A DNA stretch of 64,000 nucleotides from Chrysemys picta bellii (Eukaryota). Each line of letters opens with the position of its first letter. The first letter of the stretch is position 1. Positions 1,536-53,300 of the stretch are shown one piece after another. The notes under the pieces are model-generated. The model saw nothing but the letters and a program-made list of their open reading frames with translations, ran no database searches and was not told where the DNA came from. The stretch covers positions 110,298,001-110,362,000 of the forward strand of contig NC_088798.1 in the NCBI RefSeq assembly GCF_011386835.1, in the 5' to 3' direction. The translations under genes and the position numbers were made by a program.

Positions 1536-4500
1536 ATGGCGGCGGGTCCGGGAGGGGGCGGCTGTGCGCGCCGCGGGCGGTGGGGTCGGGGCTGCCCCGT
1601 GCGTGGCCTCTTGTCCGGGGCGCTGCTGCTGCTGGCGTCCGGGCTGCGGCGCGGGGCCGCCGAGCTCACCGACGGGAACAACGAGCACCTGAAGCGGGAG
1701 CACTCGCTGACCAAGCCCTACCAGGGTGAGGGGGCGAGCGGGGCTGGGGACACCCCTCCGAGACGGGCCCTGCCACGGTCTGGCCGCTTCTCCCCCTCGC
1801 TGGCCCCACGTTCCCAATGGGTCCCCCCAGGCCTGTCCGGCTCAGCCTGCCCCCAGCATGGTCATTCTCTGCAGCTCCCAGAGCCCTCGCAGCCCTTCCC
1901 GTCCGCTTGGCTTGTGATCTCAGCTGTGCCCCTTCTCTCTGCTCTAGGGGTTGGTTCCACTTCGATGCCGCTCTGGGACTTCCAGGGGAGCACGATGCTC
2001 ACCAGCCAGTATGTCCGCCTGACTCCTGATGAGCGCAGCAAAGAGGGCTCCATCTGGAACCGCGTGGTGAGTGCCGCCTTGTGATGGAGGAGATCCCATT
2101 CGGTTTGCTCGGGAGCTGGAGTTCCAAGCCCTGGTTCTGAAGCCCTGAATGAGGGTGAATACTGCAGCTTCTGTGGGGGCTATAGCTGTTGTCCCTGAGA
2201 GGAAAGAGAGAGGGTGCAGTGGCTAAGAAGTTCTGTCTGTGGGAGTCCCCATGGGTGGGGGAGGTGTCCATGGAATGCTGTCCATGGTACTGAGTGTGAC
2301 TCCCTCTCTCTCAGCCCTGTTTCCTCAAGGACTGGGAGCTCCATGTCCACTTCAAGATCCATGGAGCAGGCAAGAAGAACCTGCACGGGGATGGCTTTGC
2401 CCTGTGGTACACCCGGGAGCGCCTCATGCCAGGTACATAGTAGGGGATGGTGCATGCACTCAGAGAAGGAGAGATCTCCCTCCCACTGTGGGGGCAAGGT
2501 GGGGCAAAGTTCCTGTCATTATGACTTCTACACTTCATCCTTTCAGTAACTGCCAGCAGCAGCTCAGGAGGGGGAAATGTAACTAGTGTGCCCCATAGCA
2601 CTGGGGTGCCCCCTTTTGAGCCCGCTTCTAGAGAGCAGGAGTGGGGGTTGCCAGTCCACTCTGCTGAGTATCTCTATCCAAAGTCAGAGAGACAAGGTGG
2701 GTGAGGCAATATCTTGTATTGGATCAACTTCTGTTGGTGAGAGACACAAGCTTTCAGGCTACACACAGCCCTTGTTCAGGTCTGGGAAACTAACTCCAAA
2801 GTGTGTGTTGAGATTCGCCTCCATTTGCTGTCTATGGCAGGCTAGGGTTCTGAGCCTTGAGTGTGCCTCGCTTCATGACTTGCCCTGACAGAAGCTGGGC
2901 TGGTTTGTCCCTGTCGTGTAACACATGACTCTCACCGCATCTTCTTGGTATCGGGGTCTCACTAGTCTCTAGCACCTACGCTCTCCATTAGTGCTTTCCT
3001 CTGTAGAAGTTATTTGTAACAATGAATTAAAGACTACTTATTCATGTTGCTTGAGTAGAAGTGGCTTGAAAGGTGTGTGATTTTTTTTTTTTTTTTTTTT
3101 TTTTTTCCTGTGGGGAAGCATTTCATAAACCCCCCTGGCTGATTTGATAGCAGCCTTAGTCTGTTCATTAAAAGTGTAGCCAAATGTTTTACTATACTTG
3201 CTGATTGTTCTTAAAAATGTTCAAGAGCCCAAATAACAAACTTAACCAAATTTATTGTCTACAGACAAAGCATTACAGTACAAAAAGTAAACATTTCCCT
3301 CCTTTTGGGAAGCAGTTCTTGTCTTGCAGCATGTTCACCTTACGTCAGGGATACACCCCCAAAACCATTTCTACATATAGAACAGCTGCTGACAAGTTAC
3401 AAAGCATTTTATACGACACCTAAGATCCAACCCACCAATTTGTACTAGTTCCTGAATTTGTTGTTCTGTACCTTTATTTTATCTTTGTTTTGGATATTAA
3501 CGTTCCAGCTATTGATCCATGAAGTTAGCTGCCCAGCTTATACCAGGGCAGAATATTAATGGATTTTGCCTTTGACAGTGTTCCTATCCACTTAGGCTAA
3601 ATGTTGAGTTGTTCTGTTCAAAGGTATTATACCAGTGAACAAGAAGGAACAGCATTGTGGGGAAAATTACAGGGCCTTGGAGCTGTGCTCAGGTTCCGCT
3701 CCAGTTCCAGGCAAAAACCTGCGGCTCCGGGCTCCGGCCCAAAGCCCTGGGGAAAAACAACACAAGTCAGTTAGCATAAATAGCCAACACTTATACATAC
3801 AATATTCATGCCATGCACTTCATACATCAGGGGTAGGCAGCCTATGGCACGTGTGCCAAAGGTGGCACGTGAGCTGATTTTCAGTGGCACTCACACTGCC
3901 CGGGTCCTGGCCACCGGTCTGGGGGGCTCTGCATTTTAATTTAATTTTAAATGAAGCTTCTTAAAAATTTTAAAAACCTTATTTTACATACAATAATTTA
4001 GTTATATATTATAGACTTATAGAAAGACCTTCTAAAAAACATTAAAATGTATTACTGGCACGCGAAACCTTAAATTAGAGTGAATAAATGAAGACTCGGC
4101 ACATCTCTTCTGAAAGGTTGCCGACCCCTGTCATACATAATGAGGTGGCGACAGTAATATGTATAACACACACTTTGGCTAACAATGGGATGAGACGTTC
4201 ACCAGAGACTGGTCACTGCAATGCAGAGTTGGAGGGTCCTTAGTGCCCTTTCTCCTCCATCTCCTGTTGAGTTGGAAAAGTGAATCTGCCTTGCGTATCG
4301 TGGGGGGGTAGGTGTGATTTGAAGTTCTGTGTAGCCCCTTTGTCAGAGCACTATTAACCCCGTGCTGCTTTGGTTTTCTAGGCCCTGTCTTTGGCAGCAA
4401 GGATAACTTCCATGGCTTGGCCATTTTCCTGGACACATACCCCAATGATGAAGCAACAGAGGTAAGTGGTGACGCCTCAGGCTCCTGGCAGCATGGACAG

Positions 4501-7500
4501 GGCTCATTGTGACTAGCACCAAGGAGCTGTCTTTTCGTGCTATGTGGTCCCGGCATATCACTTGTTGTGTGGGCAAGGGGCTGGGGCTGGCCTGACTGTA
4601 CTGGGGGGTAGTGGAAGGGAGAGGAAGAGATGGATGTAGTAGGAAAAAGGGGAGGGTTAGGACATGTTGAGTCACTAGCACAGGCCTGTTTTCCTAGCTA
4701 GAAAGAACCTATTTTCAGGGTCTCTGATTCCTGCTAACCTAGGGGAGAGATGCAAGGAAGAAACACGACCCTCATGCCACAAAGGAAAAACTGAAAATTG
4801 CAGCTCAAAGAAAACCTGCCCTGAGAGTCCCCTCACTTCATCCAGGTCTCTTGGGGAGCTTTCAGCCCATATGACGATGAGTTAGTAAATGTCCGTTGCT
4901 AGATCATAGGTTAATCCTGCCAGATTCGTCCTGCCCTTGGTTGCAAACACACGATGGAAATGGAGAAGAGTAGGAAAAGAAAAACTTCGGTCTATCGGTC
5001 TAATCATTCCTGTACTAACTCTTAAGCCCACAGCTCAGTTTGGCAGAAATCCATCCAAAATGTGCTCTCCAGGGGGTATATCTTTGTAGTTGATTCTCCT
5101 CCTTTCTCCCATGTGTGCGCAAGTCTCGTTACATCTTCTAGCTGCCATGCTAACTTTCATCTATCAAGATCCACTGGCTCCGTCTTCTGTCTCATCAAAC
5201 ACAAGCTGCTTGTCTTCACTTTCAAGGCCCTTCGTGGTCTCTCCCCACTACCTGTCATCTCTCACTCACTATTGATCTTTGGATGCTTGCATCTGATTGA
5301 TTTTATGATGCCAGCTTCCACTGCTCGTTTGTCTACATTTTCAAGTGAACGCCTTTGTGCTTTCTCCCATGCTGCCCGTCCTACTTGGGAGGAGCTCTCC
5401 CTGAGCATCTGCAAAGCTCCTTCAGCATTCTCCCGAAGGCTCTCCTTTGCTGTGATACCTGCAAAAAAAGATTGACAATGGTTAAGCCACTGGTGTGCAG
5501 AGACTGCTGCCTTTCATGCCAACCAGTATTGTCTTACTGTTTGCTTGTACTTTCACATCTGTCTATGTCCGTCTAGTGTCTCTCGTTTCATACTTCAATT
5601 GTTAGCTCTTTGGAACTCTGCTTGTACAGTGCCTAGCACAACGTGATCCTGGTCTCCTAGGTGCTACTGGAATACAAATAATAAAAACGATCGAGATCTG
5701 AGGTGGCCCATCCTGTATCAAAGGGGTCAGAAGCATGTCAGGGAGGAAGAAAAGGCTAGCAGGAAGGTTTTTCTCACTACAAACCTGATGGAGCTGGTCC
5801 TTGTCTGTGCTGAGGATGGGCAGGCAGAGAGATCTGCCTGACTGGCCCTTGCTTGGTGCCTTCCTAATTCCGTGCTCATCTGATCGTTTTGTGTGCTCCG
5901 GCTGAGATGCGTTTCCCGAGTGTGGCCCAAGGACTGGATAGCAGGGTCTGTCTATGTCAGCTTCCCTCCACAAAACACATCCTGAGGCCAACCTAGAAAA
6001 GAACCTTTGACTTATTTGCTGCTCTTCTTCATTGGCACTCCATAGCTTCAGTGCCACAGGGGATGGTGGGTCTGCACATGGGTCCTGTCAGGTGGAGGCT
6101 CAGGCTTGTGGGATATATCTCCCTCATGCAGAATGCAGATCTCTCCCAGCTGTAGAAGGCTCAGAGTAATGTTCTCCTTCCCTGCCCCTCCAGCGTGTGT
6201 TCCCGTACATTTCTGCCATGGTGAACAACGGCTCCCTGGCCTATGATCACAGTAAGGATGGGCGCTGGACAGAGCTAGCAGGCTGCACAGCTGATCTTCG
6301 AAATCAGAACCATGATACTTTCCTGGCAGTTCGTTATTCCAGGGGCCGGCTGACGGTGAGATGGATTTGGGAGATGGCACTGAGCTTCGTGCCTGTTGCA
6401 GGCTCTGAGCTGTGCAGTTGGGTTTGTGCTGGGCGGGACAGTGGTGGGAATGGCAGCACTGCCAAGGCCAAGGGGTGATGTTGGGAGGACAGCTCTTTCT
6501 CAGCACACCTGGATCAGCCAACCTGCCCTCTTGCCACTGTGGCTCTAGAGAGAGTGATGGTGGGCTGGGCAGAACTCGGCGCCAGAACAGAGGGGGCCAG
6601 GGCCCTTCCACTCTCTCAAAGTGGACTTTTGCTGGGGCAGACCCCCTCCTCTTCCCCCTGAGGCTCTCCCTGTTGCCAGGTTGGCATGGAGTCCCCCTGG
6701 GGAGGGGAGCCTGGGCAGTTGTGGGAGCTGTGCATGTGGACTCTCCACCTGCCTGCATGGGGAAGGGGGGGGCTGACAGTAGCCCCTGGCCTGTGTCTTG
6801 GGCTCCCGGCCCGGTGGAGGTACGTTGTCCACGACTCTGTGCCGGCTTACCACAGCTGCTCGTGTGGCTCTCCCTGACCTGCCTGTGCAGGGCGGGGCAG
6901 GCCTCGGAGCCAATACAGACCCTCCATCTCTGCCTGCCCTGGACCAGACATGGAGCCTGGACAGGGGCAGGGGGCTGCTTTTGGCCTTGGGTGTGGTGGG
7001 CTCGTGGCCCCACTCCTGCTTCCAGCTTGGCTGGGGGTGGGGGCCCCTGGCACCCCCACTTTTGAGAAGGCTCTGATGCCCTTGCTTCTGTGCCCTGAAG
7101 TGACTTTGTCTTTTCCTGGCAGGTGATGACCGATGTGGAGGACAAGAATGAGTGGAAGAACTGCATTGACATTGCAGGAGTCCGACTGCCCACTGGCTAC
7201 TTCTTTGGGGCTTCTGCTGGCACAGGGGACCTGTCTGGTGAGAGCTCCTTTTGAACTGGAATATGTTCTCAACCCAAGCCAGCTCTGGGGGCTGGGGCAT
7301 GGTGGTGTGGGTGGAGTGGCGTTCCAGTGCTGCCTTGCAGTGGGCTGAGCACTTGGAATTCTTAACCATGCAGGAGAGGCGACAGGCAGCCTGGGAAAGA
7401 GAGCAGGCTCTTTGGCTAGGCACCTGGGGAAAGCCTCCCACATGGAAGCCAGGTTTCTGAGTCAGGGAGGGTGGGCCTGAGGGAGACTAGGGCATGGAAG

Positions 7501-13498: not shown

Positions 13499-17052
<3,554 letters not shown>

Positions 17053-17306
17053 GCAGCCTGCCACGCTGAGATGCCCAGGGACTGCAGCGGGGCCATTCGG
17101 AGCAGGGCAGGTTCGCTGCGGCAGCTGAGCGCGAGGGCTGGAGCATGGAGGCGACAGACTGGAAGAGGGCTGAGGAGCCAGCCCAGCTCCTCGGTCGGTG
17201 CAGCTGGAAGGGCAGAACTGAGACCGAGACACTGTGGCCCCCAGCACAGATGCCGCTCCCTCCTTGCGCTGGCCATGGCAGAGCCACCTCCGTGCTCCAA
17301 GGGGAC

Positions 17307-17312
17307 AATAAA
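17307..17312 (+). terminator. Probable B4GALT7 polyadenylation signal AATAAA
   Basis: First AATAAA, about 255 nt after the stop codon. Confidence 0.6.
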
Positions 17313-17880
17313 GACCCATCAGGACCATGTGATATCAATGCACTGAGCCTCGCCCTGCTTTCCATGCCAGTGCCCATCTGCCAGCCTTGGTCAGGCACCA
17401 TTTCTGCTCCTCGCTCCCTTGCTCTCCTACTGCTCTGTGATTCCAAGAGGAAGCAGGGACGGAAGCCAGGCTGTGAGTGTCTGCAGGAGGCCAGTCACTC
17501 GGGAGGCTCACAAGAGAGGTTTGGTTGATGCAGTGGGGCCCAGAACCCCATTAACACGGGCTGGGATTTCAACAGAGAATGGGACGTATTGGCTACAATA
17601 CTGCCCAGAACTTCCCATTCCCCTTCATGTGGCTTCTAGGTCCCGCTGCCCACCCCTGCTTTCTGTGGAGTAAGGTCATGTTTCTGTTGAACCCCAGCTC
17701 GTGAGCATGTCACTGCTCACCGGCTGCATCCCCCCAGAGCACCAGCAGTGCCAGTGCCACTTCCCACAGTACACACCATACCCCAGCCTTCTCCATGGGG
17801 CTTGAGTGAATATCTGGTGCCTTGGCCTCTAGTGCCCCCTTCTCTCCTGGCCCTGCCCTCTCCCAGCTCTAGTCAGGAAA

Positions 17881-20065
17881 TCCTGCACCGTGTTTCCCTG
17901 GAATGTAATGGCTGCTCATTTGCTGCAGTGGTGGCATTAAAGCCAGTGGAGCCATGGATGGTGTCCGTGCAAGAATCCAGCCCCGGGCTCCTCCCCAGCA
18001 GCCAGAGATGGAGCTTCCTGTACTGCAGGGGGCAGGGTTCTGAGACTCCCTACCCCAGGGAACAGCACAGGCCTGTGAATGTTTCTGGTTAGAGAAGGAC
18101 CAGAGGGGTGTCTGTTTGTGTGTAATTAACCACAGGAACAACTGCCCCGGGGGACTCTCCACCGCTGACCATTTCTAAATCCCAACGGGCTGTTTTTCTA
18201 ATCGCTCTGCTCCAGGAATGGTTTGGGGGGAGGTCTCTGCCTGTGCTGTACAGGAGCTCAGACTAGACAATCACTAAGGTCCCACCTGACCTTGGAATCT
18301 CTGAACTGAGCTTCCTTCCTGGACCGAGAGGCTGGCCACCCCCTCCAGCTGCGGCCAACAGCAGCTGCTCTGTAGGCTGGGTCATGCTAGCCCAAGGACC
18401 TGCTGCCCCATAACTGCTGGCTTATGCGCTGGTAGAGCCAGGACTGCTGGGCTCTGCTCCTGCAGCCTCAGTGCTGCAGAAGGTGGCTTCTTCTACTGGG
18501 TCTAAACCTCTCACCCCCAACCTGTTCTCATTGTTGTGAGATGGGGTGAGGAAGCAAATACAGCTCTTCCAGCCCGCAGGAGGGTTTCACTGCCCCCTGC
18601 AGCCATCAGGCCAGGCATGACGGTGTCCTGCTGGGTGCATCACAGGATGCTGAATGCAACAGCAACCTTACAGCTGGAGGTCCCAGACCTGCTGTGGGGC
18701 CTGCCCACCCTCCTGCCAGGCTCTGCTTTGGTGGAAAAGTCCACTCGGCTCAGAATGGGGGCTGCACATGGTGGGGGGCTGGGACTACAGGGCTTAGCTC
18801 ATGGGCCAGGCCCCCACAAGCTGGACTGGCCCCTGGTAATACCCCCTAAAGCAGGGACCTGCTGCCCTCCTGCAATCCCCTGCAGGAGCATGAAAGTGAG
18901 AGCAGGACGGCCCTGTCGCTTCATGGCAAACTCAAAAGGTCTTTTCTGCACATCTGAACTGGCACCGGGGGTACCACGTTACCAAAGACACCCATGACTA
19001 GAGGCAGCGCCAAGAAGAGCAGTAACTGGGAGTTGGGGGTGCTGGAGAGACCAATTCACAGCTGGATGCCCATCTTGGCACAGCAAGGGGGGAGGGATGC
19101 AGGATAAATCTACACACCTTACAAGAGGGTGAACCCCTTGGGAGAAGAGGGATTAGTTATGTGGGTGCCTGGAGCTGAGACAAGGAACAAAGGGTTGGAA
19201 ATGAGCGAAGGAAAAGCCGCCCAGCAGTCCAGGAATGCAGCCATGGAGGTGCGACAGAAAGGGTAGGAACCCATTGCATGGACGGATCCCTGTACAGGTG
19301 TGAACATGCCCTGGATGGGTGCTCAGCATGACCCTCTAGGCAGTATAACACAGAGGGGACTTACTATGGCTTTCCCCTGAGGTCTGACGATCCCAGGAGC
19401 AAGTCATCTGTGGAGCCAAGTCCCAGGCTGCCTGATCCCACCGTCATCCAGCTCACGCCTCCAGCCGTCAGGCTCTCCCAAAGCACTCGGGGCAGAAGGG
19501 GGGGACCACAGGCAGCATGGGGGCAGGAGTCTGGCCTAGAGCCTCCCATCAGCCATGCAGTTCCCAAGGCCAAATTTCATCTCTGAGCGTGAGGGGGCTG
19601 GTGGCAGGCCAGAGAGGCGCTCGCCTGTGAAAACATCGGGCAATGACCCAAATTCTGACCCTCTGCTGTTGGTTTTGGGACCTGTGGAGAATTAACTAAT
19701 GTCTTGGGGCATTCCCAGAGGGCCGGTGTCCACTGTCCCCCTTGTTCCCAGGGGCTGAACCCCTCTGTCTTGCTGTGGGGGCTGTTGTTTGGCAGAGGGG
19801 GAGCTCCCGGTGCTGGCTGTGCTACATGTGGTGGGAGGACAAAGGTCTGCAGGCCTCTCATCAGCCCATCCTGGGATCCCCCAAGGAGCTGAGGGATCAA
19901 GGCTGGTTCTAGTGAAAAGGCCCTGCCTCGCAGTGCTAAAGGCCCCATCCTGAGGGCTGTTCCCACAGCTGCTACATCCAGGGGTCTCCCCATCGCCGGA
20001 TCAGACAGCCACTGGGTCTCTCATTGTCTGGCTCGGGGCATAGCCAATCCCTGGCTCGGGGCTTA
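17881..20065 (-). pseudogene. Possible decayed 3' exons of the Rab11-FIP-like gene
   Basis: Candidate large exon 20065..19365 (pyrimidine acceptor, GTAAGT donor) has stops at 20001-20003, 19692-19694, 19536-19538 and one more in the frame inherited from exon 4. A faint, frameshifted resemblance to the Rab11-binding coiled coil lies at 17928-17881. Stop density is only modestly below random for GC-rich DNA. Confidence 0.3.
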
Positions 20066-20151: not shown

Positions 20152-22618
20152 CTCCAGTTGCATGTGCGGAGCCCGCGGCGGTGCCCCTGGCCATCAGTGC
20201 TGATGGATCCGGTTCAATGGGCAGGCTGGAGGAGGAGGAGGAGACCTCATCGTTGGTCTGCCCAGAGGGAACAAACAGGGTCAGCACAGCAGTCAGATGC
20301 CGTGAGCTTTGGCTCCCTAGGCCTGTTCCTTGAGGAATGCTCTGAGCACTGCTGTGCCCCTGGCCTAAGCTTTCATGGCCACCATGCCCTTGTCCAACAG
20401 CTGTGTGCAGTCCTGGCAGGCTGGGCCCCTCTCACCTCCTGGCTCCATCATTTCAGTGCCCACTGCAAATCGTGATCCTAAATTGCTTTCTCTGAGAAGC
20501 TCATGGGGCAGCCAGGGTCACCCTTGGGAGCCCCGTGGCATCCAGGATTGCAAGATGTGCCCTTAGTTGAGAGGGAGGCAGGGAGTTCTGTTCTTCTCCA
20601 CAGCCACTTGCCGGATTCCACAGGTCAAAGTCTCCAGGGACACGTTCCAGGATACAATGCCTATTGCTCCTGTCCCCCAGGCTGAGATCCTGCCCCCCGA
20701 CACTGAGCTGGGCAATTTAGCACCCCAAAGAGCCCACCTGCTACCTCCAGGGTAAGCAACATGCCGCTAACAACAGCCACGCTCAGAGGCCCAAGATAAG
20801 GGGAGTGAAACACCTGGCTGGCCAGAGAGACGCCACGTACCGTATACAAGGAAGGTGATTGGGACTCAGGATAAACCTTGTTTCTTCGGCCCTTCATGCT
20901 GCTGTGGAGCTTAGTGAAGAGGGACCATGGTCCTTGGATGCTGAATGCCTTTTTGCTGCCAGGAGACAGGATCTGCATGAACTGGAGGTCGAGCTGCAGC
21001 TGCCCTCGCACCTTGTCAGGTCTGCCACGCCTGGATTGCAGCCTGAACCATCTGCGCCAGACAACGCCATGAACCATGAGGAAGCTGCTCGAGCCTTCAC
21101 TGCTCTATTTGTCCCGAACTCACAGGGCTCAGCCCACTAAGGACTGGGGGTAAAGGGAGCTAAATGTTGTGCTGAGTCCTGCTCTTAGAAGTTATATCTT
21201 GTGGCTACACCTCACTGCCCCGGGGAAAAGCCCCCTGGCCCTGGCCACGCAGGCTCCCCAGCCACGTGCAGAGGAATTTGTGCCTTCCAAGTCCCTTGCC
21301 TGGTGGGCTGTTTACTTCTGAGCCAGCCTGGGATCCTCCCTTTTCAGCAATCGGGCCGGGAAAGCCCATCCTGTGTGGTGCAGTGGCTCTGCTCTCACCC
21401 ACCCCCAGTTCTGGTCTCTAGCTCTCTGAGCCACTTTCTTCTGCCCTCTCCTTTCCCACCAGCCCTTCTCCCTTCCCCTGGTCACAGGCTTTCCGCACCC
21501 GAGCTGAGACAGCGCTTTCTAGGGGTCTTTTACCAGCTAGTCAGAAAGGCCCACACCCACCGCACACCTGGCCAGGTGCATTTATGGGGAGCTTCGGCTT
21601 CCTCTGGATCAGTCCTTGGACCCTGCCAGAGAGGGGAGTCCAACCCCCGCCCCCATTCCGCTGTATGTTGGCACCAGAGAGCCCAACCCCACCAGGTAAA
21701 GCTCCCCGTAGAGCTGCTCTGTGCTCTGGGGCACCCCACACAGACCCCAGGAGAGGTGACTGAGCCCTGGTAATGTGTCTGGCTCATAGGTCAACCACAG
21801 AAGGGCAGGAGGTAAATGGTTCCCTGGGACACCTCCATTCCCTGGCCCCAGGTCTCAGCCCCATGGATGGGGCAGGGGTGGCTGCAACACTCACTCATTC
21901 CTTCTCCTTGCCTTGTTGCAGAACAGCTGTGGCAGGGGAAGGCAGAGCCGGCCCAGGAATTGGTCGGGGCGATGGAGACAGTGGTGCATGGCAGTGAGGA
22001 CGAGACTGGGCTCCTCTGCCTCCTCCAGCCTGCTGGGCAGCTGGAGTGTGCACTCCTCCCTCCACTCGGGGGTCAGGCTGTGGGGCACCACTGACGTCAT
22101 GTATTTCTGCTTTTGCAGCTGAATGACCACGTAGGGGCTGCTGGAGCCAGCACCCCCTTTGGCCCGCAGTGACCGAGCCCTCAGGACGGTCACACGAAGG
22201 TGAGTCGGGTGCCACTCCTCCGACTCGGCCACCCTGCAAGACACGAGCCCATGTCAGTCCCCGGTGGCCCCGCGCCCACTACGGGCTGAGAATCCCCATG
22301 AACCACCAGGGATGTGGCGGGGACTGTCCCCACAGCCTCTGCCCATGTCCCCAATGCAGACAAACTGGAGACTGGTGTCAGGAGGTGGGGGAGGGCAAGA
22401 CCCTGGTGCGGGATGGGGGGGCAGAGGGGGTGGGCCAAGCTGCCCTGGAGGCGTGGCGGGGGGCTAGTCACTGAGGGGGAGAGGCTACTTGCTTGGAGGA
22501 GGGGAGGTGGGGGGTAGATTGACCTGGAGGGGGTAGGGCGGCCCGGGGGGAGAGGCTAGTCCCTGGGAGGGGCTCTTTACCCCGGGCGGGGGCTCTGGGC
22601 TCCGTGCTCCGCCTCCAT
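20152..22618 (-). CDS. Class I Rab11 family-interacting protein-like gene (N-terminal C2 domain); 5' four exons intact, 3' end unresolved
   Basis: complement join 22618..22581 (MEAEHGAQSPRP, GTAAAG donor), 22233..21895 (WHPTHLRVTVLRARSLRAKG...PYVVIQLQKQKYMTSV...PEWREECTLQLP...DQFLGR), 21051..20841 (WFRLQSRRGRPDKVRGQLQLDLQFM, GTACGT donor), 20257..20152 (GTGAGT donor). All junction phases match. The motifs and the intron within the ..E|W codon junction match recalled RAB11FIP1/2/5. Confidence 0.85.
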
Positions 22619-23110
22619 AGGGGCGCCCTGGCCCGCCCACGTGGCACCGGCCCGCCCCATGCTAACGTCACAGAGCGGCGGGAGGATCCTGGGCCCGGAG
22701 CCCCCAGGGGGCGGGGCCACATCGGGCCATTAGCCCCGCCCACGGACCTCCTGAGCCTGTGCGAGGCCCGCCCAGGGGGGCGGGGGAGAGAGCCGGTGAG
22801 GGGCGGGGCCCGGGGGCGGGGCAGAGCCCAGGGGGCGGGGCGATCTCCGAGCCGTGGCCCGCAGGGGCTGGCCTGGCACCGAGCTCGGGGGAACAGCAGG
22901 GTCCGGTGGGGGGGTGACTCCCCTGCTGCCCCTCGGGTCCCTTCCCCGGCTCGGGCTCCTCCTGGTCGTCAATAGCCCAGGGCCGGACTCTGGCTGCAGG
23001 GAAGGGGCAGAGGGGGGCAGGCGATGGCTGGTGTCGGGTCTGTTGGGCAGAGGGACCCGGAGCCGGGCAGAGCTCTTCCCGGGTGTGGGGAAGGCCCTCG
23101 GGGCCCCCGA
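22550..23110 (-). promoter_or_regulatory. CpG-island promoter of the Rab11-FIP-like gene
   Basis: CpG-dense; GC boxes, CCACGTGG at about 22637-22644 and a CGTCA half-CRE at about 22666-22670, just upstream of the ATG at 22618. Confidence 0.65.
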
Positions 23111-23239
23111 ATACGAGGTGGGACAGACAGTTTAGCATAAGTAGCTAACACACATTTCAAGGGACCCTTCAAGGTGAAGTGGCCTGTTAACAGTCACCTG
23201 GGGGAAAGCAGCGGGCGAGTCGTTGGCGGGTCACAGATT

Positions 23240-23481
23240 CAGGGCCGGCTCCAGGCACCAGCTCTGCAAGCAGGTGCTTGGGGCGGCCAAGGGGAAGGGG
23301 CGGCACATCGGGCTTTTCGGCGGTTGGTCCCTCGGTCCCTCTTGGAGGGAAGGACCTGCCACCGAAGTGCCGCCGAAGAAGAAAGCGCCGCGGCGGAGCT
23401 GCTGCCGAATTGCCGCCGATCGCGATCGTGCCTTTTTTTTTTCCGCCACTTGGGGCAGCAAAAACCCTGGAGCCCGCCCTG
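23240..23481. mobile_element. GC-rich hAT MITE, 242 bp
   Basis: TIRs CAGGGCCGGCTCCAGG / CCTGGAGCCCGCCCTG (15/16); TSD CACAGATT / CACAGACT (7/8). Confidence 0.85.
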
Positions 23482-24170
23482 CACAGACTGTTGTAAGAAG
23501 CCATAAATCCAGTGTCTCTGTTCGGTCCATGAGTTTTAGTATCTAGCAAAATTCTCAATTTAAGCTCCCAGGCTTGTCTTTTGAAGGTATTGTGCAGGTT
23601 TCCTTAGAGGACGAGGACTGAGAGGTCAGACGTGGAGTGATCGCTTTGTGAAATGTGTTCACCCACAGGTGATGGGGTGTTTGTCATCATTTTCCTGTGT
23701 GAGGTACACAGACAGCACAGTGATTGTCTAGTTGCACCCTCATAGTTGCTATTGGGTCATGTAGGGCACTGGCTGAGGTACACCACATATTGTGATAGGC
23801 ATATGTAGGACCCCTGGATCTTGAGTTGGGGGGGGGGGTGTGGCTCATCCTAGCAGTGGAGATATGTCTGCAGGTTTTGCGTCTGTTGCATGGAAGGGTT
23901 TGGTGCTGTGTTGGGGTGTCCTGGTCTGTGGGCAGCTTGCTTCTGATGATGATCTTGGGAAGTTGTTTGAAGGCCAGAAAAGGGGTTTTGGGAAAGGTTT
24001 CTTTTGGGATGGGGTCCCCATTGAGTGGGGGGTGCAGTTATTTGATATCCCATGTGGGTTCCATGTGGGGTGGTAGGTGAAAACTCGGGGTGTGCAGTCG
24101 GAGGCGGTTTTAATTCTGTCTTGAAGCAGGTTTTCTCCGGGTATTTGGGAGGCTCATTCCATGGGGCGCA
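23482..24170 (-). mobile_element. Penelope-like element fragment (GIY-YIG endonuclease region), degenerate
   Basis: Minus-strand translation QIPGENLLQ...TYHPT...SYICLSQYVVYLSQC..PNSNYEGATRQSL...HRKMM...PVGEH.SQSDHS...ELKLRILLDTKTHGPNRDTG, with stops and frameshifts. Confidence 0.85.
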
Positions 24171-36309: not shown

Positions 36310-39300
36310 ATGGCAACAGCACAGGCCCCTCATGTGACCTGTGACCCTGGCAACTGCCTCCTTGACTCTTCCCTAGCCTCTGCGCCTGGGAGCTACGGCT
36401 GCGGCATGGGCAGCGTGGGCAGCTTGGTGGAGAAGCAGGACTTGACGCCTGTGGAGCTGCGGGCGGTGCTGGGGGGCTCGCGGGGGCTCCGGCAGCCGGA
36501 CGGCCTGCTCCGGAAGGGCCCGAGCCAGCGGGAGCTCTTCAGCTACCTGCACAGCGCCAGGAAGGAGCCCCGGGCCGAGAGGAAGCACCAGGCGCTGGGG
36601 GCGTCCTGCAACCGGGACTACGAGAGCGACCGTGAGAACCGGTCCCCTGACCGCTACTCCCGCGAGCACCACCGGGGGGCAGACTTCTCCAAGAGCTCGC
36701 TGCCGGAGCGGGGCCGCTTTGACAAGGTGAGGCCCTGGGTGATGGGCTGGGCTGGAGCAGCCCATGTGGCTAGGGATCCGCGGGACTAGTTGTAAGGATG
36801 TTTCCCACAAGTGCGTCGCACCAACCGCCCCTGAAATGCAGCTGTCTCTAGAGTGGAGTGCAGCCCCCAAATGGGAGCTGGTTGGCGCAGAACACGTGAG
36901 GAGGGGGCCCTTATGGACAGTCCCCATGTTCTCGGCGGGCCAGGTGGTGATGGGCCCCTGTAACTGCTGTGACAGCTGGGAGCTGCTGGAAGGTCCTTGT
37001 ACATAAACCTCATCTCTGTGTCCAGGGCAAAGGGGTGGGGCAGCCCTGAGCCATCCTGCAGCTGGGGACACAGACTGGGGTGCCTCAGCTCTTCTCCCTG
37101 CTGAGTGGAGAGGCAGCAGGGCTGGGTGGCTCTGCTGAGACCAGGTTGATCCTTGGCTCCCTTGTCTTTCAGTGTCGGATCAGGCCATCGGCCTTCAAGG
37201 CAGTGGCTGGGAAAGGCCTGGTTTCCATGCAGGGCCTGGCCTCATCTAAAGGGCAGAAGCTGTCGAAGAGCAACGGGAGCCTGCACACCCTCCTGTCCCA
37301 GAGCAGCACCAGCACCGGTGCCTCCTCCCAGCATGGCCACATGCGCACCCACCTGCTGCACACCATCAGCTTAGACGAGGCCTCCAATTCCAGCCACAAC
37401 TCCATCCAGAGCTTCCCCATCTACCCTCCCCACTTCAAACCTGCCCAGGGCCAGTTCAGCGCCTCTATGGGCCACATCAACCACATTGGGGGCTCCCTTG
37501 ACAGGGCCTCCTGGGGCCCCAGAGACCCCCTGGCAGTGGAGAAAGCACCTCTGTCCTGCAAGAGCATGGCCACGCTAAGCCGTCTGCAAAGCTCTGGGGA
37601 GCCCCCACCCCCCTACGAGTTCACCTACTCCCTGGAGGACGTGGTGAAGCAGCTGGAGGACCGGCTGCAGGAAAAGAGTGGGGAGCTGTGGCAGTTGAAG
37701 AGGAGCCTTAGCGAGACTGAAGACCCCTTCACGCAGGTGAGTGCAGTGGGGTTGGTCTGAGGGTGCAGGGCCCTGGGCCTGCTTCCCCCCACCCCCAAAG
37801 CAGGGATGCTAGTGTCTCATGTATTGCCCCCGTGCTGTTGTCTTGGAGCTCACTGTATGTTGGGGTCTGTGTGTGGTCCATGATTCCCTGGAGTGCTGTG
37901 CTGGCAGTAGTGTGCTGGTGTGTTGTGTCTGGTGCGAGCAGAGCGGGGGAAGGGCACATTCACCTCCAGAATCCAGTGACCTGTTGGGAAATGGGGAGCT
38001 TGGGCCCTGCTGCTCCCAGTGCCAGAGCATCGGGCTTGCTCCAGAGAGATTGGGCTTGAAAATCTCAGTGCACGAGGAGCCTTTTCCCCCTTGCACCAAG
38101 GGAAGGTGGCGGTGGGTGGCCCATAGGAGCAGCTGCCCAGCCTGTATGTGCTCTCTTGAGAAAATGGAGACATTTATGTTTCCGAAGCTCGTACTAGGGG
38201 GGGAATGGTCCAGTGCCGGGAGGTGAGCGCTGCTGTCCTGACTGTATCATGCTTGGAGATGGATTGTGTGTTGCTGCAGGGTGGCCCTTAGAGCTGCTGC
38301 TTCCCATTCCAGTGTCATGGGGCCAGGCTGCTCCCTGTGCTAGTGACTTCCTTTCACTAAGCCACCTCTAATCCACCATGGAGTTGGGGCAACTGCTCCC
38401 CGCTGCAGGGCTGGGATCCGGAGCAGCCTCAAATACTAACAAGCTGCTGGAGGGGGCTGGGCTGCCTGGCACTTCGCCCCAGGAGCTGGGCACAGACCTC
38501 TGCTTGTGCCAGCAGGTTTTCGAGGACAAACAGCATCTGTGGATGGATGCACTGGACGAGCTGAAGCAGATGTATGTCGCCAAGCTGCAGCAGGTGACCC
38601 AGCAGGCCCAGCGCAGCCAGCGGGCACTGCAGCTGCAGCTCTACAAAGCGCAGCAGGAGAAGAAGCGGCTGCAGGAGGAGCTGAGCCTGCACCAGGGCCA
38701 ATGCGAGGAGCTGAGGCAGTGGCAGCAGCAGTGTGAACGTGTCAGCCCCAAACTAGAAGAGACCAGGTGGGAGGTGAGTAAAGGAGAACCCTGCAGCTCT
38801 CCTTCACCCTTCTGCCCCAACAGCTGTCCTAGTGCCCCTCAGTCCCAACCCACAGCCTCAGCCCTCGGCACAGGCGCCAATTGTACCATGCTCTGAGGTT
38901 TTTGGGGAGGAACTTTTGGCTCAGGACGAGGCAGAGAGAGGCTGAGTCACTGTCATCTGTGACTTAATGCAGCTGTGGACCTGGGACTACAGCCAAAAGC
39001 CTAGTGACCCCCCCACCCCACCCCGCCTCCAAACCATCCCTCACACCCCTACAAAGCCTCCATTTCCTGCCTGTGGGAATCCCGAGAGTGCTGCCTGGTA
39101 TGGCTGCCCCATGGCAGGTTTAATGCTCTATGCCCCTGCCTGGCAGAGTTGGGATTGAATGGGGGTTTCCTCTCCAGATTCACCCAATGATTCTAAACCC
39201 CATCCCCCCTTTTCCTGTGCATCTCATATCTCGCTCTGTCCCTCTCCACCCTTTCTCTGCCTCTCCTGCAGGTTTGTCAGAAGGCGGCTGAGATCTCACT

Positions 39301-39844
39301 GCTCAAGCAGCAGCTTCGAGACTCCCAGGAGGAGATGGCCCAGAAAGTCAGTGAGATCTTCAGCTTGAAGACCCAGCTGCGGGAGGCCCGGGCAGAGGTG
39401 CAAGCCAAGGACTCTCAGCTGGCCCAGCTAGGGGACTCCTTCCAGGCCCCACCAGAGCCCAGCTCCTCCCTCCCTTTGGGGGATGCTCCCATGCCAGTCT
39501 GCCAGGACTTCTCTGGCTGTGAAACTGACGACTCCAAGTCTTGGGGTCTTCACAGCGAGAGTGGTGAGCCCCCGGAGAGGCAGGTGGAGTGGCTGTGGGC
39601 AGAGCTGCTGCGGGAGCGGCGCCAGGCCCAGCTGAAGGCTGTGAACTTTGAGCTGGAGCGGAAAACCTGGCAGGAGGAGAAGGAGAAAGTGCTGCGCTAC
39701 CAGAGGGAGATCCAGGCAAGCTACATGGAGATGTACCACCGCAGCCAGGCTTTGGAAAGGGAGCTGCGGCAGCTGCGGGCTGAGCCCAGAGATGCTGACG
39801 CAGACTCACCCTGGATCGAGAGAGTCGAGTCTTCAAAAATCTGA
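36310..39844 (+). CDS. N4BP3: NEDD4-binding protein 3 (LZTS family coiled-coil protein), 4 coding exons, 603 aa
   Basis: join(36310..36726,37173..37736,38516..38773,39272..39844), all phase 0, GT-AG. MATA...[79 protein letters not shown] and ESSKI*. Confidence 0.95.
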
Positions 39845-50300: not shown

Positions 50301-53300
50301 ATCATAATTATATGATGGGGTGAATATGGGGGGTCCAGGGTGCTGCTTTGAGGCACAGAGCGTCATGACCTCCTACTACTGTGCCGCCACCCACCCAGAA
50401 ATGCGCTGTTGTGGCTCTGAGGCTGTGATCCAGCCAGCCAATTGAATGCAGCTCCATGCAGGGGCCGCAGTGGTTTGGGTGGGAGGGTGCTGTTGTGGGG
50501 TGGCTTTGCAGGCAGCTGCAGGGGGTTTGTTTGTGAGCATGTGATCAGGCCGGGAGGTGACAGATGGGGGGCTGTCCCCTCATTCTCAGGGGCACCACTG
50601 ACTCCTCTCATTCATCTCCCAGAACTTCGATGCCGAGCTCTGCAGCGTGGTCTCGGATTCCGTCTGGGAGTCGCGGGAGAAGCAGCAGCAGATTCTGCAG
50701 ATGGCGATTGTGGAGCACTTGTACCAGCAGGGCATGCTGAGTGTGGCGGAGGAGCTGTCCCAGGTACCAGGGCTGCCGGTCATGAGACTGGTGCTAGCTT
50801 GCCACACAGCAGCATTGTGTGAGGGAGGGTTGTGGCCTCCCTGGGGCAGGGGGAACCAGGAGTGCTGTGACCTGCTGTCTGGTGAGTGGGCCTTACTCAG
50901 CATTAGCCACTGGCAAGGTTCGCTCCAGGCCAGCACCTCTAGCTGACCCAGGCCAGTTGGTATGAGGCCCTGCCCAGCTCTGCAGGGACCGAATTGCAGC
51001 TGCCAAGTCTGCTGCTCTCCTGCATGTGCTCTGTGCTCCAAGGTGGAGGGCCTCTCTCCATCACGCAGGGTAGGAAACCTCACCCATCTCTGGCTGGGGA
51101 GCCTCTCCTGGCACCACCCCTCCGCCCCGGTGCATGCCGCCCTCCCCAAGAGGATGGTGGGATGTGACCACTGGCTCTCATTCTCCACAGGAGTCCACCC
51201 TGAATGTGGACTTGGACTTCAAGCAGCCGTTCTTGGAGCTGAACCGGATCCTGGAAGCGCTGCACGAGCAGGACCTGCGTCCTGCTCTGGAGTAAGAACC
51301 AATCATCTGGGAGTGCCGAGCATCCAGTGCCCCTCCTCGCCCACAGCCTCCCCACCCTTACTGAAAGTAGCCCCTCCCCTTCTGCTAGACTCATGCACCG
51401 AGTCTGGGTTGGGGTATGGGGTGCTTTGGCTGGTCAAGGGAGAGCCCGGTGCACCCCAGCTAACGTGTGATGATCTCACTCACCCTGCCTGCTGGAGCAT
51501 GCACCTTGCACCCCTGTTGGAATGAGGCCTACAAGCACAATGCTCCTTAACGCCCCCTGACCAGCCCTCCTGGGGCAGCGCCATCTGCAGGGCCTGGCAC
51601 ACCCTCCTGCCCATGAGCCACTTATGTTCCTTTTCACCCCAACTGACTCTGGTGCTACCTGGGCAGTCCCTGGAATTATAGACACTGGAGGGAAAGGAGC
51701 CCTCTAGGCCAGCCCGGCCAGGGGCATTTCACACAAAACAGTCTCCAGGAACGGGAATAACCCCATCCTCGTCTTGTCAGGTTGGGCATCAGTGAGAGCT
51801 TCCTGGCTGTCCTGGCCCACCTCCCCAGGACAGCCAGGACTTAGCTGCCCCCTGTTCTTTCCTATCCAGCTGGGCAATCTCAAACAGGCAGCGTCTGCTG
51901 GAGCTGAACAGCTCCCTGGAATTCAAGCTGTATCGTCTCCACTTCATCCGGCTCCTGGCTGGTGGCCCTGACAAGCAGCTGGAGGCCCTGAGCTACGCTC
52001 GCCACTTCCAGCCCTTTGCCCGCCTGCACCAGCGAGGTGAGACTGTGCCAGGTGGGGCCCTGCCACTGGCCTCCCTAGTGGGGCACGGGACTGCCCGGCT
52101 GGGTAGCCCCGTTCCCAGGCTACAGGGGCCCCATCACTAGCCCCGTACTGGAGGCATTGGCTGGTTGGCAGGACAGGGTGGGGGCTGGGGCCATACTGCT
52201 TCTTGAGGCCAACCAGGTGTTGTGTTGTTCAGAGATCCAGGTCATGATGGGCAGCCTGGTGTACCTGCCCCTGGGCATTGAGAACTCCCCGTACTGCCAC
52301 CTGCTGGATGCCCGGCACTGGACAGAGATCTGCGAGACCTTCACCCGCGACGCCTGTGCCCTGCTGGGGCTCTCGGTGGAATCCCCTCTCAGTGTCAGGT
52401 AAGCCCCAGGCCAGGGCCGGCAGGGTCCCCCCTTAGCAGCACCACCAAGTGCTAAGGCCTCTCCCTCTCACGCAGCTTCGCGTCTGGATGTGTGGCGCTG
52501 CCCGTGCTGATGAACATCAAGGCGGTGATTGAGCAGAGACAGTGCACGGGTGTCTGGAGCCACAAGGATGAGCTGCCTGTAAGTGCCATCTCGATGGGGG
52601 GCGGGGGGGCGGGGCGAGGCAGTGGGGCTGACCTCCCTGCGCTCTCTTGGCAGATTGAAATTGAGCTGGGCATGAAGTGCTGGTACCACTCAGTGTTCGC
52701 CTGCCCCATCCTTCGCCAGCAGACGACTGACTCCAATCCGCCTATCAAACTCATCTGCGGGCACGTCATCTCCCGGGACGCGCTCAACAAGCTCATCAAT
52801 GGGGGGAAGTAAGTTTGGTTTCTTGACATGCTCAGGCCGTGGACCCTGCCCCACCTCCGCCCTGCAGCCCCTGTCCTGCAGGCTTGGCCCTCGCCTGGCA
52901 TCACTTTGTGTGACGCAGCCCGGTGCCATGGGAGTGTGAGTGCTCTGAAGATCCCTTGGCCTGTGCCCTGTACCGCCAGGGTTCCTGGCTGGCCTTGTGC
53001 TAGTCTGGGCCAGATCGCCTTCCCGAGCTCCCCTGCAGCTGGGTGCTGCGGGTAGCAGTGAGCCTGAACGGGCTGGGTGCCGTGCATGCTGATGAGCAGG
53101 GCTTGTTATCTCTGGGGCTGGGAAGTAGGGTGCACAAGCAGTGCTGCTGCCTGCCTACGGCCAGCCCCAGGCCTTCCTTAGACTGAGCCTTGAGGGCTGG
53201 ACTGTGCCGGGAGGGGCAGACTTCTGCTGCTGTCGGTCCCCTGCAGTGCCCCAGAGCTCTGCCGTTTTCTCTGTGTTCCCTGGCCTTCCTGCCTGATGCC

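What the first reader, a model, noticed from the sequence alone, without database searches (positions are those of the whole stretch)
20152..23110. A class I Rab11-FIP paralog at a locus where I know of no human counterpart: a candidate lost ohnolog
Seen: four phase-compatible exons encode about 231 codons, including a full FIP-type C2 domain (W.PTH..VTVL.AR.LRAKG, KY.TSV, P.WREE, D.FLGR, WF.L.S..G..DK.RG) under its own CpG island. Known: humans have three class I FIPs (RAB11FIP1 8p11, FIP2 10q26, FIP5 2p13). The neighbours here have paralogs on the same 2/8/10 paralogon (LMAN2L, RMND5A, LZTS1/2). Inference: this is the chromosome-5-type copy from the vertebrate genome duplications, retained in this lineage, divergent (the NNMTASMFDLS motif is replaced) and perhaps unannotated or mis-named.
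Basis: partly seen in the sequence, partly recalled or inferred. Interest (0 to 1): 0.8.

Follow-up and report, generated by a model that had tools for sequence, protein, structure and literature searches.

The report
Decaying fourth FIP-type C2 gene
The four exons are real and belong to an ancient fourth relative of the Rab11-FIP1/2/5 genes that placental mammals appear to have lost, but the family has no Rab11-binding domain, and this turtle's copy has lost its last exon and is drifting like a pseudogene.

Summary
Observation confirmed. Four minus-strand exons with canonical GT/AG sites (22618-22581, 22233-21895, 21051-20841, 20257-20152) encode 231 codons. They contain a C2 domain (Pfam E=2e-19) whose nearest relatives are class I Rab11-FIPs.

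Interpretation partly supported.
- The genome also holds complete FIP1, FIP2 and FIP5 on other chromosomes.
- In a tree rooted on amphioxus, this gene falls in its own gnathostome-wide clade (99/97 support), with sharks, rays, chimaera, axolotl, squamates, turtles, echidna and marsupials. It sits outside FIP1+FIP2 and FIP5.
- It lies tail-to-tail with B4GALT7 in lizards, turtles and echidna.
- The four Fez1-family genes (N4BP3/LZTS) lie on the same four chromosomes as the four FIP-type C2 genes.

Three qualifications:
- RefSeq already models the family in many species as "rab11 family-interacting protein 2-like" (about 385 aa).
- No member has the Rab11-binding domain. They end in a conserved CxxCFGL helix instead.
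- In this genome a clean 1,055-bp deletion at 18969-18973 removed the whole last coding exon (147 codons). dN/dS against Mauremys is 0.78 (C2 region 0.95), against 0.17 between two lizards. A hawksbill turtle carries different disabling deletions.

So this copy is most likely a decaying remnant.

The parts
22581..22618 (-). Coding exon 1: ATG plus 12 codons and 2 nt, donor GG|GTAAAG
   Evidence: It is 96% identical in DNA to exon 1 of the Mauremys mutica RefSeq model P0176, and its phase fits exon 2.
21895..22233 (-). Coding exon 2: FIP-type C2 domain (113 codons), acceptor ..cttgcag|G, donor GA|GTGAGT (phase 2)
   Evidence: Pfam C2 E=2.2e-19. It is 42-53% identical to the C2 exons of this genome's FIP2, FIP1 and FIP5. 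The intron position and phase match those three genes.
20841..21051 (-). Coding exon 3: last C2 strands (WFRLQSRRGRPDKVRGQLQLDLQF) plus the start of the linker, donor ACG|GTACGT
   Evidence: The junction to exon 4 is seen in a contig of run X5.
20152..20257 (-). Coding exon 4: Ser-rich linker. It ends in donor G|GTGAGT; read-through would stop after two more codons (..HATGGE*)
   Evidence: A contig of X2 covers the donor unspliced (record 13).
18969..18973 (.). Junction of a 1,055-bp deletion (TACCC microhomology). It removed the end of intron 4, all of coding exon 5 (147 codons, stop codon, CxxCFGL helix) and about 400 bp beyond.
   Evidence: Mauremys L023 14852-15907 and Eretmochelys L028 12058-13095 have no counterpart in the window. 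Exon 5 has no match anywhere in this genome. A contig of X1 spans the junction, and junction words occur in runs of three further studies.
22500..23500 (.). GC-rich stretch with moderate CpG enrichment around and upstream of exon 1; presumed promoter
   Evidence: GC 0.63-0.76, CpG o/e 0.55-0.70, against 0.2-0.3 in the flanks.
16210..16326 (+). Exon of B4GALT7, the convergent neighbour. Its 3' UTR runs to about 18050.
   Evidence: Glyco_transf_7C hit E=3.3e-9. Contig depth is 44-70 up to 17890-18048. The same tail-to-tail neighbour is seen in Varanus, Lacerta, Mauremys, Eretmochelys and echidna.
39269..39769 (+). Fez1-domain exon of the N4BP3-type gene, upstream neighbour
   Evidence: PF06818 hits at E=9e-16 and 3e-18. 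The three other Fez1 genes lie on C5, C2 and C7.
51868..52396 (+). CTLH-domain exons of the RMND5B-type gene
   Evidence: Another CTLH-domain locus lies on C5 with FIP5; identifying it as the RMND5A paralog is my assignment.
1944..7242 (+). LMAN2-type lectin gene exons
   Evidence: PF03388 hits.

Best explanation
The exons belong to an unnamed vertebrate gene family, here called FIPx. It is the fourth copy of the ancestral class I Rab11-FIP gene, most likely from the early vertebrate genome duplications, alongside FIP1, FIP2 and FIP5. FIPx kept the FIP-type C2 domain and the exon boundary behind it, but lost the C-terminal Rab11-binding domain before sharks and bony vertebrates split. Intact members are about 385 aa: a confident C2 fold, about 190 disordered residues with a KKKS..LKEER motif, and a short C-terminal helix ending in CxxCFGL. 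I infer that this is a lipid-binding C2 protein held on membranes at both ends, with the cysteines plausibly palmitoylated, and acting without Rab11. That mechanism is untested. In the window's turtle the gene is decaying. A 1,055-bp deletion removed the entire last coding exon, and the remaining 231 codons have evolved at the neutral rate since the split from Mauremys. The locus is still transcribed and spliced at a low level. At best it yields a 233-aa C2-plus-linker product that lacks the conserved tail.
For: Shown:
- C2 domain and exon model.
- This genome holds complete FIP2 (C7), FIP1 (C2) and FIP5 (C5), each with C2 and RBD. There is no RBD on C8.
- Careful ML tree rooted on amphioxus: FIPx clade 99/97, with a cartilaginous-fish subclade and a tetrapod subclade at 100/99 each. 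It is separate from FIP1+FIP2 (99/94) and FIP5 (92/89).
- The intron after the C2 exon has the same position and phase 2 in all four genes.
- B4GALT7 is the neighbour in lizards, turtles, echidna and wombat.
- Fez1-family genes lie on C8, C2, C5 and C7, the same four chromosomes as the four FIP C2 genes. CTLH (RMND5-type) loci lie on C8 and C5.
- No Pfam RBD in 8 orthologs at E<=1.
- AF2 model of the Mauremys protein: C2 at pLDDT 86-97, residues 165-355 below 50, helix 360-379.
- Varanus against Lacerta: dN/dS 0.17 overall, 0.09 for C2, 0.13 for exon 5.
- Deletion of exon 5 with TACCC microhomology. The junction occurs in independent runs.
- Window against Mauremys: dN/dS 0.78 (C2 0.95), 30 nonsynonymous to 12 synonymous changes. 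Exon divergence is 0.061 and intron divergence 0.054-0.068. This is not different from neutral (p=0.47) and rejects omega=0.17 (p=1.6e-6).
- The hawksbill copy has a separate deletion of about 3 kb (end of exon 3 plus exon 4) and a 32-bp frameshift in exon 5.
Against: - Exons 1-4 have no stop, frameshift or broken splice site. Only 2 of the 56 columns conserved at 90% or more differ, both conservatively.
- One spliced contig shows the locus is still processed.
- Contigs of X5 (same species label), X2 and X7 break or diverge at 18969, and X5 lacks the junction words. An undeleted allele may therefore persist.
- The neutral rate is measured over both turtle branches and rests on only 42 differences.
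- The order of the FIPx, FIP1+2 and FIP5 splits is unresolved. Lamprey and hagfish sequences do not fix the timing.
- Synteny in cartilaginous fishes could not be tested, because the 10-kb flanks held no genes.
- The membrane-anchor mechanism is inference only.
Confidence: 0.7

Rival explanations
1. The copy is still a working gene in this turtle. It would make a shortened C2-plus-linker protein, either by reading through the exon 4 donor (233 aa) or by using a new 3' exon. Alternatively, the deletion is only one allele of a polymorphism, and the species keeps an intact gene.
For: Exons 1-4 and all their splice sites are intact. The conserved core residues are kept. There is a spliced exon 3-4 contig. 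Contigs of X5, X2 and X7 stop or diverge exactly at 18969, and X5 holds none of the junction words. Changes polarised to the window's branch are 8 nonsynonymous to 5 synonymous, which is too few to exclude some constraint.
Against: dN/dS is 0.78 overall and 0.95 in the C2 region, and exons diverge as fast as introns. The lost exon is under strong constraint where the gene is intact (omega 0.13). A second turtle lineage has independently broken the gene. The junction words are present in runs of three studies besides the probable source. No protein from this gene in the window's own species appeared in the protein collection.
Confidence: 0.2
2. The missing last exon is an assembly error, and the gene is complete in the animal.
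For: The source assembly has 9,850 contigs. Several contigs from other runs end at 18969.
Against: An 811-nt contig of X1 crosses the junction without a mismatch. Both sampled junction words occur in 8 runs from two studies other than the probable source, and one of the two in three runs of a third. The breakpoints share a 5-bp microhomology and there are no Ns. Exon 5 is nowhere else in the assembly.
Confidence: 0.05
3. It is a recent, fast-evolving, lineage-specific duplicate of FIP1, FIP2 or FIP5, or the species' only FIP1/FIP5.
For: RefSeq names such as '2-like', '1-like' and '5-like'. Long branches could mislead a tree built on 181 columns.
Against: FIP1, FIP2 and FIP5 are all present and complete in this genome. 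Orthologs of the candidate exist from chimaera and skates to marsupials, and they form one clade at 99/97, found in 98% of bootstrap trees. Position next to B4GALT7 is conserved.
Confidence: 0.02

Closest known systems
Class I Rab11 family-interacting proteins (RAB11FIP1/RCP, RAB11FIP2, RAB11FIP5/Rip11)
   Same: They share an N-terminal FIP-type C2 domain, 42-53% identical to this genome's own FIP1/2/5. The phase-2 intron directly behind the C2 exon is in the same place. Shark and ray members keep the RDNMTAS motif. The gene lies in the matching paralogous chromosome block.
   Different: There is no Rab11-binding domain in the window, on its chromosome or in any ortholog. The proteins are short, about 385 aa. 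There is an extra small first coding exon. The proteins end in a CxxCFGL helix. No full-length placental-mammal protein was found.
RefSeq Gnomon models 'rab11 family-interacting protein 2-like' (for example Mauremys mutica P0176, Anolis P0167, Monodelphis P0157, Tachyglossus P0158, Carcharodon P0224)
   Same: These are orthologs of the window's gene. Exons 1-4 are 88% identical in protein to P0176. The five-exon layout and the B4GALT7 neighbour are the same.
   Different: The window lacks the fifth coding exon that all of these models have. The names are automatic. No paper in the searched library describes the family.
Unitary pseudogenes (single-copy genes decaying in place in one lineage)
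   Same: A constrained exon has been lost, the substitution rate is neutral, and there are independent lesions in a related lineage.
   Different: The four remaining exons are still open and splice-competent, and the locus is still spliced at a low level.

Membership tests
Class I Rab11-FIP (as a protein family) | N-terminal FIP-type C2 domain | tested here: met
   Pfam C2 E=2.2e-19. The nearest paralogs in this genome are the FIP1/2/5 C2 exons. It groups with class I FIPs in the tree.
Class I Rab11-FIP (as a protein family) | C-terminal Rab11-binding domain (RBD-FIP, PF09457) | tested here: not met
   Six RBD hits in the genome and none on C8. No PF09457 hit at E<=1 in 8 full-length orthologs. 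AF2 shows only a 20-residue terminal helix.
Class I Rab11-FIP (as a protein family) | Binds Rab11-GTP | not testable with these tools
   This needs a pull-down or two-hybrid assay with an intact ortholog.
Class I Rab11-FIP (as a protein family) | NNMTASMFDLS-type motif after the C2 domain | tested here: not met
   It is replaced by MQILSPGS.. in the window and in other tetrapods. Skates, rays and sharks keep it as RDNMTAS.
Class I FIP gene lineage (homology by descent) | Shared intron position and phase behind the C2 exon | tested here: met
   There is a phase-2 donor at the equivalent codon in FIPx and in this genome's FIP1 and FIP2. The FIP5 reading frame ends at the equivalent point.
Ohnolog from the vertebrate genome duplications | Own clade holding both cartilaginous fishes and bony vertebrates, outside the sister paralogs | tested here: met
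   FIPx 99/97; FIP1+FIP2 99/94; FIP5 92/89; amphioxus root.
Ohnolog from the vertebrate genome duplications | Lies in a block whose other gene families are spread over the same set of chromosomes | tested here: met
   The four Fez1 genes are on C8, C2, C5 and C7, as are the four FIP C2 genes. CTLH (RMND5-type) loci are on C8 and C5. The LMAN2-type result was less clear (C8, C2, C6).
Ohnolog from the vertebrate genome duplications | Same neighbourhood in distant species, including cartilaginous fishes | tested here: inconclusive
   B4GALT7 is adjacent in Varanus, Lacerta, Mauremys, Eretmochelys and echidna, and is one gene away in wombat. The skate and shark flanks held no called genes.
Pseudogene | Loss of an otherwise constrained coding part | tested here: met
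   Exon 5 is deleted. That exon has omega 0.13 in lizards.
Pseudogene | Neutral substitution pattern | tested here: met
   Omega is 0.78 (C2 0.95). Exon divergence equals intron divergence. The pattern fits neutrality (p=0.47) and rejects omega 0.17 (p=1.6e-6).
Pseudogene | Stops, frameshifts or broken splice sites in the remaining exons | tested here: not met
   None in exons 1-4.
Pseudogene | No mature transcript | tested here: inconclusive
   Depth is low and mostly unspliced (3-10), with one spliced exon 3-4 contig. The runs are only guessed to be RNA.

The most novel reading that the evidence does not exclude
FIPx is a functional vertebrate gene family that no paper in the searched library describes. 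It would be the fourth ohnolog of the class I Rab11-FIPs, stripped of its Rab11-binding domain before the gnathostome radiation and rebuilt as a C2 protein with a cysteine-bearing C-terminal membrane helix. It is kept under purifying selection in cartilaginous fishes, salamanders, squamates, monotremes and marsupials. It has been lost repeatedly: in placental mammals, apparently in birds, crocodilians, frogs and ray-finned fishes, and it is now being lost in turtles. Because it shares the lipid-binding C2 but cannot bind Rab11, it might act as a natural Rab11-independent counterpart or competitor of FIP1/2/5 at membranes.
Probability: 0.55. Interest if true: 0.55.

Novelty: new variant of a known kind. 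Interest (0 to 1): 0.45.

Why it matters
Rab11-FIPs are treated as a closed set of five genes, three of them class I, because the work has been done in human and mouse. A fourth class-I-derived gene that lacks the Rab11-binding domain changes the family's history. It appears conserved across sharks, lizards and marsupials but absent from placentals. It also offers a natural experiment on what the FIP C2 domain does on its own, and another case of repeated loss of an ohnolog. For genome annotation, the '2-like', '1-like' and '5-like' names are misleading and the gene deserves its own symbol. For this window the message is more modest. The copy here is a remnant caught early in decay, which is useful mainly for dating loss of constraint in turtles.

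Tried and rejected
- I looked for an RBD or a CxxCFGL-type ending on the minus strand between 14000 and 20200, by eye and by pattern. None was found. The deletion later explained this.
- I considered a cryptic exon 5 at about 19867-19692 (frame 1, acceptor ..atcccag|GA). I dropped it because it has no similarity to exon 5 of Mauremys or the lizards and no joint in the contigs.
- The sea-turtle gene models (P0002, P0153) contain extra 'exons' at 22402-22355 and 21627-21556. I treated these as artefacts of modelling a broken gene.
- The search of earlier findings, by place and by words, returned nothing.
- Four literature searches found nothing on this family.
- The protein-atlas search on the C-terminal third of the Varanus protein gave no usable hit.
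- PDB by sequence gave only generic C2 domains (dysferlin, synaptotagmins) and no FIP C2.
- A homeodomain search and a pattern scan found no PROP1-like homeobox in the window. In marsupials a homeodomain gene lies between FIPx and B4GALT7.
- tblastx of the window against the skate and Tamandua loci matched only the C2 exon, so synteny there stays open.
Full report
1. WHAT IS IN THE SEQUENCE

The feature lies on the minus strand. Translation and splice-site inspection give four exons:
- exon 1: 22618-22581
- exon 2: 22233-21895
- exon 3: 21051-20841
- exon 4: 20257-20152

Each has an AG acceptor and a GT donor, and the phases fit, giving 231 codons plus one base. All quoted motifs are present. 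Exon 2 matches Pfam C2 at E=2.2e-19. One contig of run X5 carries the exon 3-exon 4 junction at exactly the predicted bases.

The stretch from 22619 to 23110 is not coding. It is GC-rich with CpG o/e of 0.55-0.70, against 0.2-0.3 nearby, so it is a weak CpG island.

2. THE REST OF THE FAMILY IN THE SAME GENOME

The window is C8:110298001-110362000 of a 2.37-Gb assembly. The RBD-FIP profile (PF09457) finds six loci above cut-off, on C10, C12, C7, C2, C1 and C5. It finds none on C8.

The window's C2 exon finds three paralogous C2 exons, on C7, C2 and C5. Each lies 20-105 kb from an RBD hit. Their sequences read as FIP2 (C7), FIP1 (C2) and FIP5 (C5), and they fall in those clades in the tree. The candidate is therefore a fourth gene, not the species' only FIP1 or FIP5.

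The donor behind the C2 exon is phase 2 at the equivalent codon in FIPx, FIP1 and FIP2. The FIP5 reading frame ends at the same point.

3. ORTHOLOGS

An exhaustive HMMER search with the C2 exon, followed by name look-ups and two word-indexed searches, recovered a set of short proteins (about 360-420 aa) that are closer to the window than any FIP1/2/5:
- a turtle, Mauremys mutica (P0176, 386 aa, 88% identical over exons 1-4)
- many squamates
- echidna and several marsupials
- axolotl
- many sharks, rays and skates, and Callorhinchus

RefSeq calls them 'rab11 family-interacting protein 2-like' (sometimes 1-like or 5-like) or 'uncharacterized'. No bird, crocodilian, frog, ray-finned fish or full-length placental protein appeared. 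The one placental hit is a lone 152-aa C2 reading frame in Tamandua, on a long branch.

None of eight full-length members has an RBD-FIP hit at E<=1. Mapping the Varanus and echidna proteins onto their loci shows five coding exons. The fifth encodes 142-159 residues.

4. PHYLOGENY

I built a careful IQ-TREE run (LG+C20+F+G4 by PMSF) on 88 rows and 181 columns, rooted on amphioxus.
- FIPx is one clade at 99/97, found in 98% of bootstrap trees.
- Inside it, the cartilaginous-fish and tetrapod subclades each have 100/99.
- FIP1+FIP2 form a clade at 99/94, and FIP5 at 92/89. The FIP1 and FIP5 clades each hold cartilaginous fishes as well; no cartilaginous-fish FIP2 was identified among the labelled rows.
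- The three gnathostome clades form an unresolved trichotomy above lamprey, with hagfish unresolved among them.

Rows left out were exact or near duplicates (P0156, P0157, P0043, P0048, P0074, P0063, P0153), multi-C2 proteins, and hits that did not cover the region.

5. SYNTENY AND PARALOGON

In the window, a B4GALT7-type exon lies at 16210-16326 (+) and an N4BP3-type Fez1 exon at 39269-39769 (+). RMND5B-type exons lie at 51868-52396 and an LMAN2-type gene at 1944-7242.

FIPx is tail-to-tail with a Glyco_transf_7N/7C gene in Varanus, Lacerta, Mauremys, Eretmochelys and echidna. In wombat a homeodomain gene sits between FIPx and that gene, and in opossum a homeodomain gene likewise follows FIPx. 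From my own knowledge of the human map, this resembles the B4GALT7-PROP1-N4BP3 order at 5q35.3.

The four Fez1-family genes of this genome lie on C8, C2, C5 and C7. These are the same four chromosomes as the four FIP-type C2 genes. The distances are 17 kb, 2.2 Mb, 2.7 Mb and 12 Mb. A second CTLH locus, which I take to be the RMND5A paralog, is on C5 with FIP5.

This is the pattern expected of ohnologs. Synteny in cartilaginous fishes could not be tested.

6. THE COPY IN THIS GENOME IS TRUNCATED

Exons 1-4 of P0176 map to the window at 85-95% protein identity, but exon 5 (residues 240-386) has no match in the window or anywhere in the assembly (best E=0.4).

DNA alignment of the Mauremys locus shows that L023 14852-15907 (1,055 bp) is missing between window positions 18973 and 18969. 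This segment holds the end of intron 4, all of exon 5 at 15062-15502, and about 400 bp beyond. The breakpoints share TACCC. The hawksbill locus also has the segment (L028 12058-13095), so this is a deletion in the window's lineage.

It is not an assembly slip:
- An 811-nt contig of X1 crosses the junction without a mismatch.
- Both sampled junction words occur in eight runs from two studies besides the probable source, and one of the two occurs in three runs of a third.

Contigs of X2, X5 and X7 end or diverge exactly at 18969, and X5 holds neither junction word. X7 carries another species label. An undeleted allele in the species cannot be excluded, and I could not see the loose letters.

Without exon 5, reading through the exon 4 donor stops after two codons, giving 233 aa.

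7. SELECTION

Over the 231 shared codons, the window and Mauremys differ at 42 bases, of which 30 are nonsynonymous and 12 synonymous.
- dN is 0.059 and dS is 0.076, giving omega 0.78 (0.95 for the C2 part).
- Introns 1-3 differ by 0.054-0.068 and the exons by 0.061.
- The split does not differ from the neutral expectation (p=0.47). It rejects the lizard-like omega (p=1.6e-6).

Varanus against Lacerta gives omega 0.17 overall, 0.09 for C2 and 0.13 for exon 5. The family, including the exon lost here, is therefore constrained where it is intact.

The hawksbill copy has a different deletion of about 3 kb that removes the end of exon 3 and exon 4 (L023 11708-14683 absent). It also has a 32-bp frameshifting deletion in exon 5.

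Against decay: exons 1-4 here are still open, and only 2 of 56 highly conserved columns are changed, both conservatively. About 3 such changes would be expected by chance on so short a branch.

8. HOW THE FAMILY PROBABLY WORKS

The AF2 model of the Mauremys protein, built on 24 orthologs, gives three parts:
- a confident C2 sandwich (residues about 30-160, pLDDT 86-97)
- a disordered middle (165-355, below 50)
- a helix at 360-379 (pLDDT 62-70)

The alignment shows a conserved KKKS..LKEER stretch and a terminal C..CFGL with one cysteine conserved in the nine-sequence alignment; that column is no longer invariant with 24 sequences.

From published work on class I FIPs (my own knowledge), their C2 domains bind PI(3,4,5)P3 and phosphatidic acid. 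My inference, which is not shown, is that FIPx is a peripheral membrane protein. The C2 domain and a cysteine-bearing, possibly palmitoylated, C-terminal helix would hold it on membranes, and it would act without Rab11. The window's product would lack the second anchor.

9. VERDICT

The idea of an ancient fourth paralog with no human counterpart is well supported. However, it is not a Rab11-FIP by the family's defining domain, it is already modelled (though misnamed) in RefSeq, and in this turtle it is a truncated copy evolving at the neutral rate.

I rate the family as a new variant of a known kind. I found no paper on it, though the searched library excludes most subscription journals. Interest is moderate.

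Noticed in passing
window 23013-23200: Contig depth jumps to 131-311 in all four runs, against 0-10 around it, with many loose ends at 23130-23193. This looks like a high-copy repeat just upstream of the GC-rich region.
   Followed up: no
G000:C8:110915276-110915805 (outside the window, minus strand): A second pair of CTLH (RMND5-type) exon hits has almost the same scores as the pair in the window (51868-52396). It lies about 565 kb away in inverted orientation. This could be a segmental duplication or an assembly duplicate. The C2 and Fez1 searches found no second copy there.
   Followed up: no
L028 (Eretmochelys imbricata) 11907 and 12250-12693: The hawksbill FIPx is broken in a different way. 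A deletion of about 3 kb removes the end of exon 3, intron 3, exon 4 and most of intron 4. Exon 5 has a 3-bp deletion and a 32-bp deletion. The deposited protein models of four sea turtles hold little more than the C2 exon.
   Followed up: yes
L031 (Tamandua tetradactyla) 10001-10459: A lone 152-aa reading frame with a FIPx-type C2 exon occurs in a placental mammal (a xenarthran). It groups with marsupial FIPx on a long branch. No other FIPx exon or window neighbour was detected within 10 kb. It is probably a relic showing that early placentals still had the gene.
   Followed up: partly
window 20027-20046 against L023 12627-13806: About 1.18 kb in intron 4 of Mauremys has no counterpart in the window. 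It is either an insertion in Mauremys or a second deletion here.
   Followed up: no
window 22619-22642: Mauremys has an in-frame ATG eight codons upstream (MWADQGAP..). The window reads TWAGQGAP there, so its first ATG is the MEAEH one. The 12-residue first exon matches the opossum and echidna layout.
   Followed up: partly
window 17300-18048: Contig depth of 44-70 ends at 17890-18048 in all four runs. This is probably the B4GALT7 3' UTR, leaving only about 0.9 kb between it and the deletion junction.
   Followed up: partly
G000 C10, C12 and C1: There are three RBD-FIP loci with no FIP-type C2 partner. Only two class II genes (FIP3, FIP4) would be expected, so one RBD-bearing locus is unaccounted for.
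   Followed up: no
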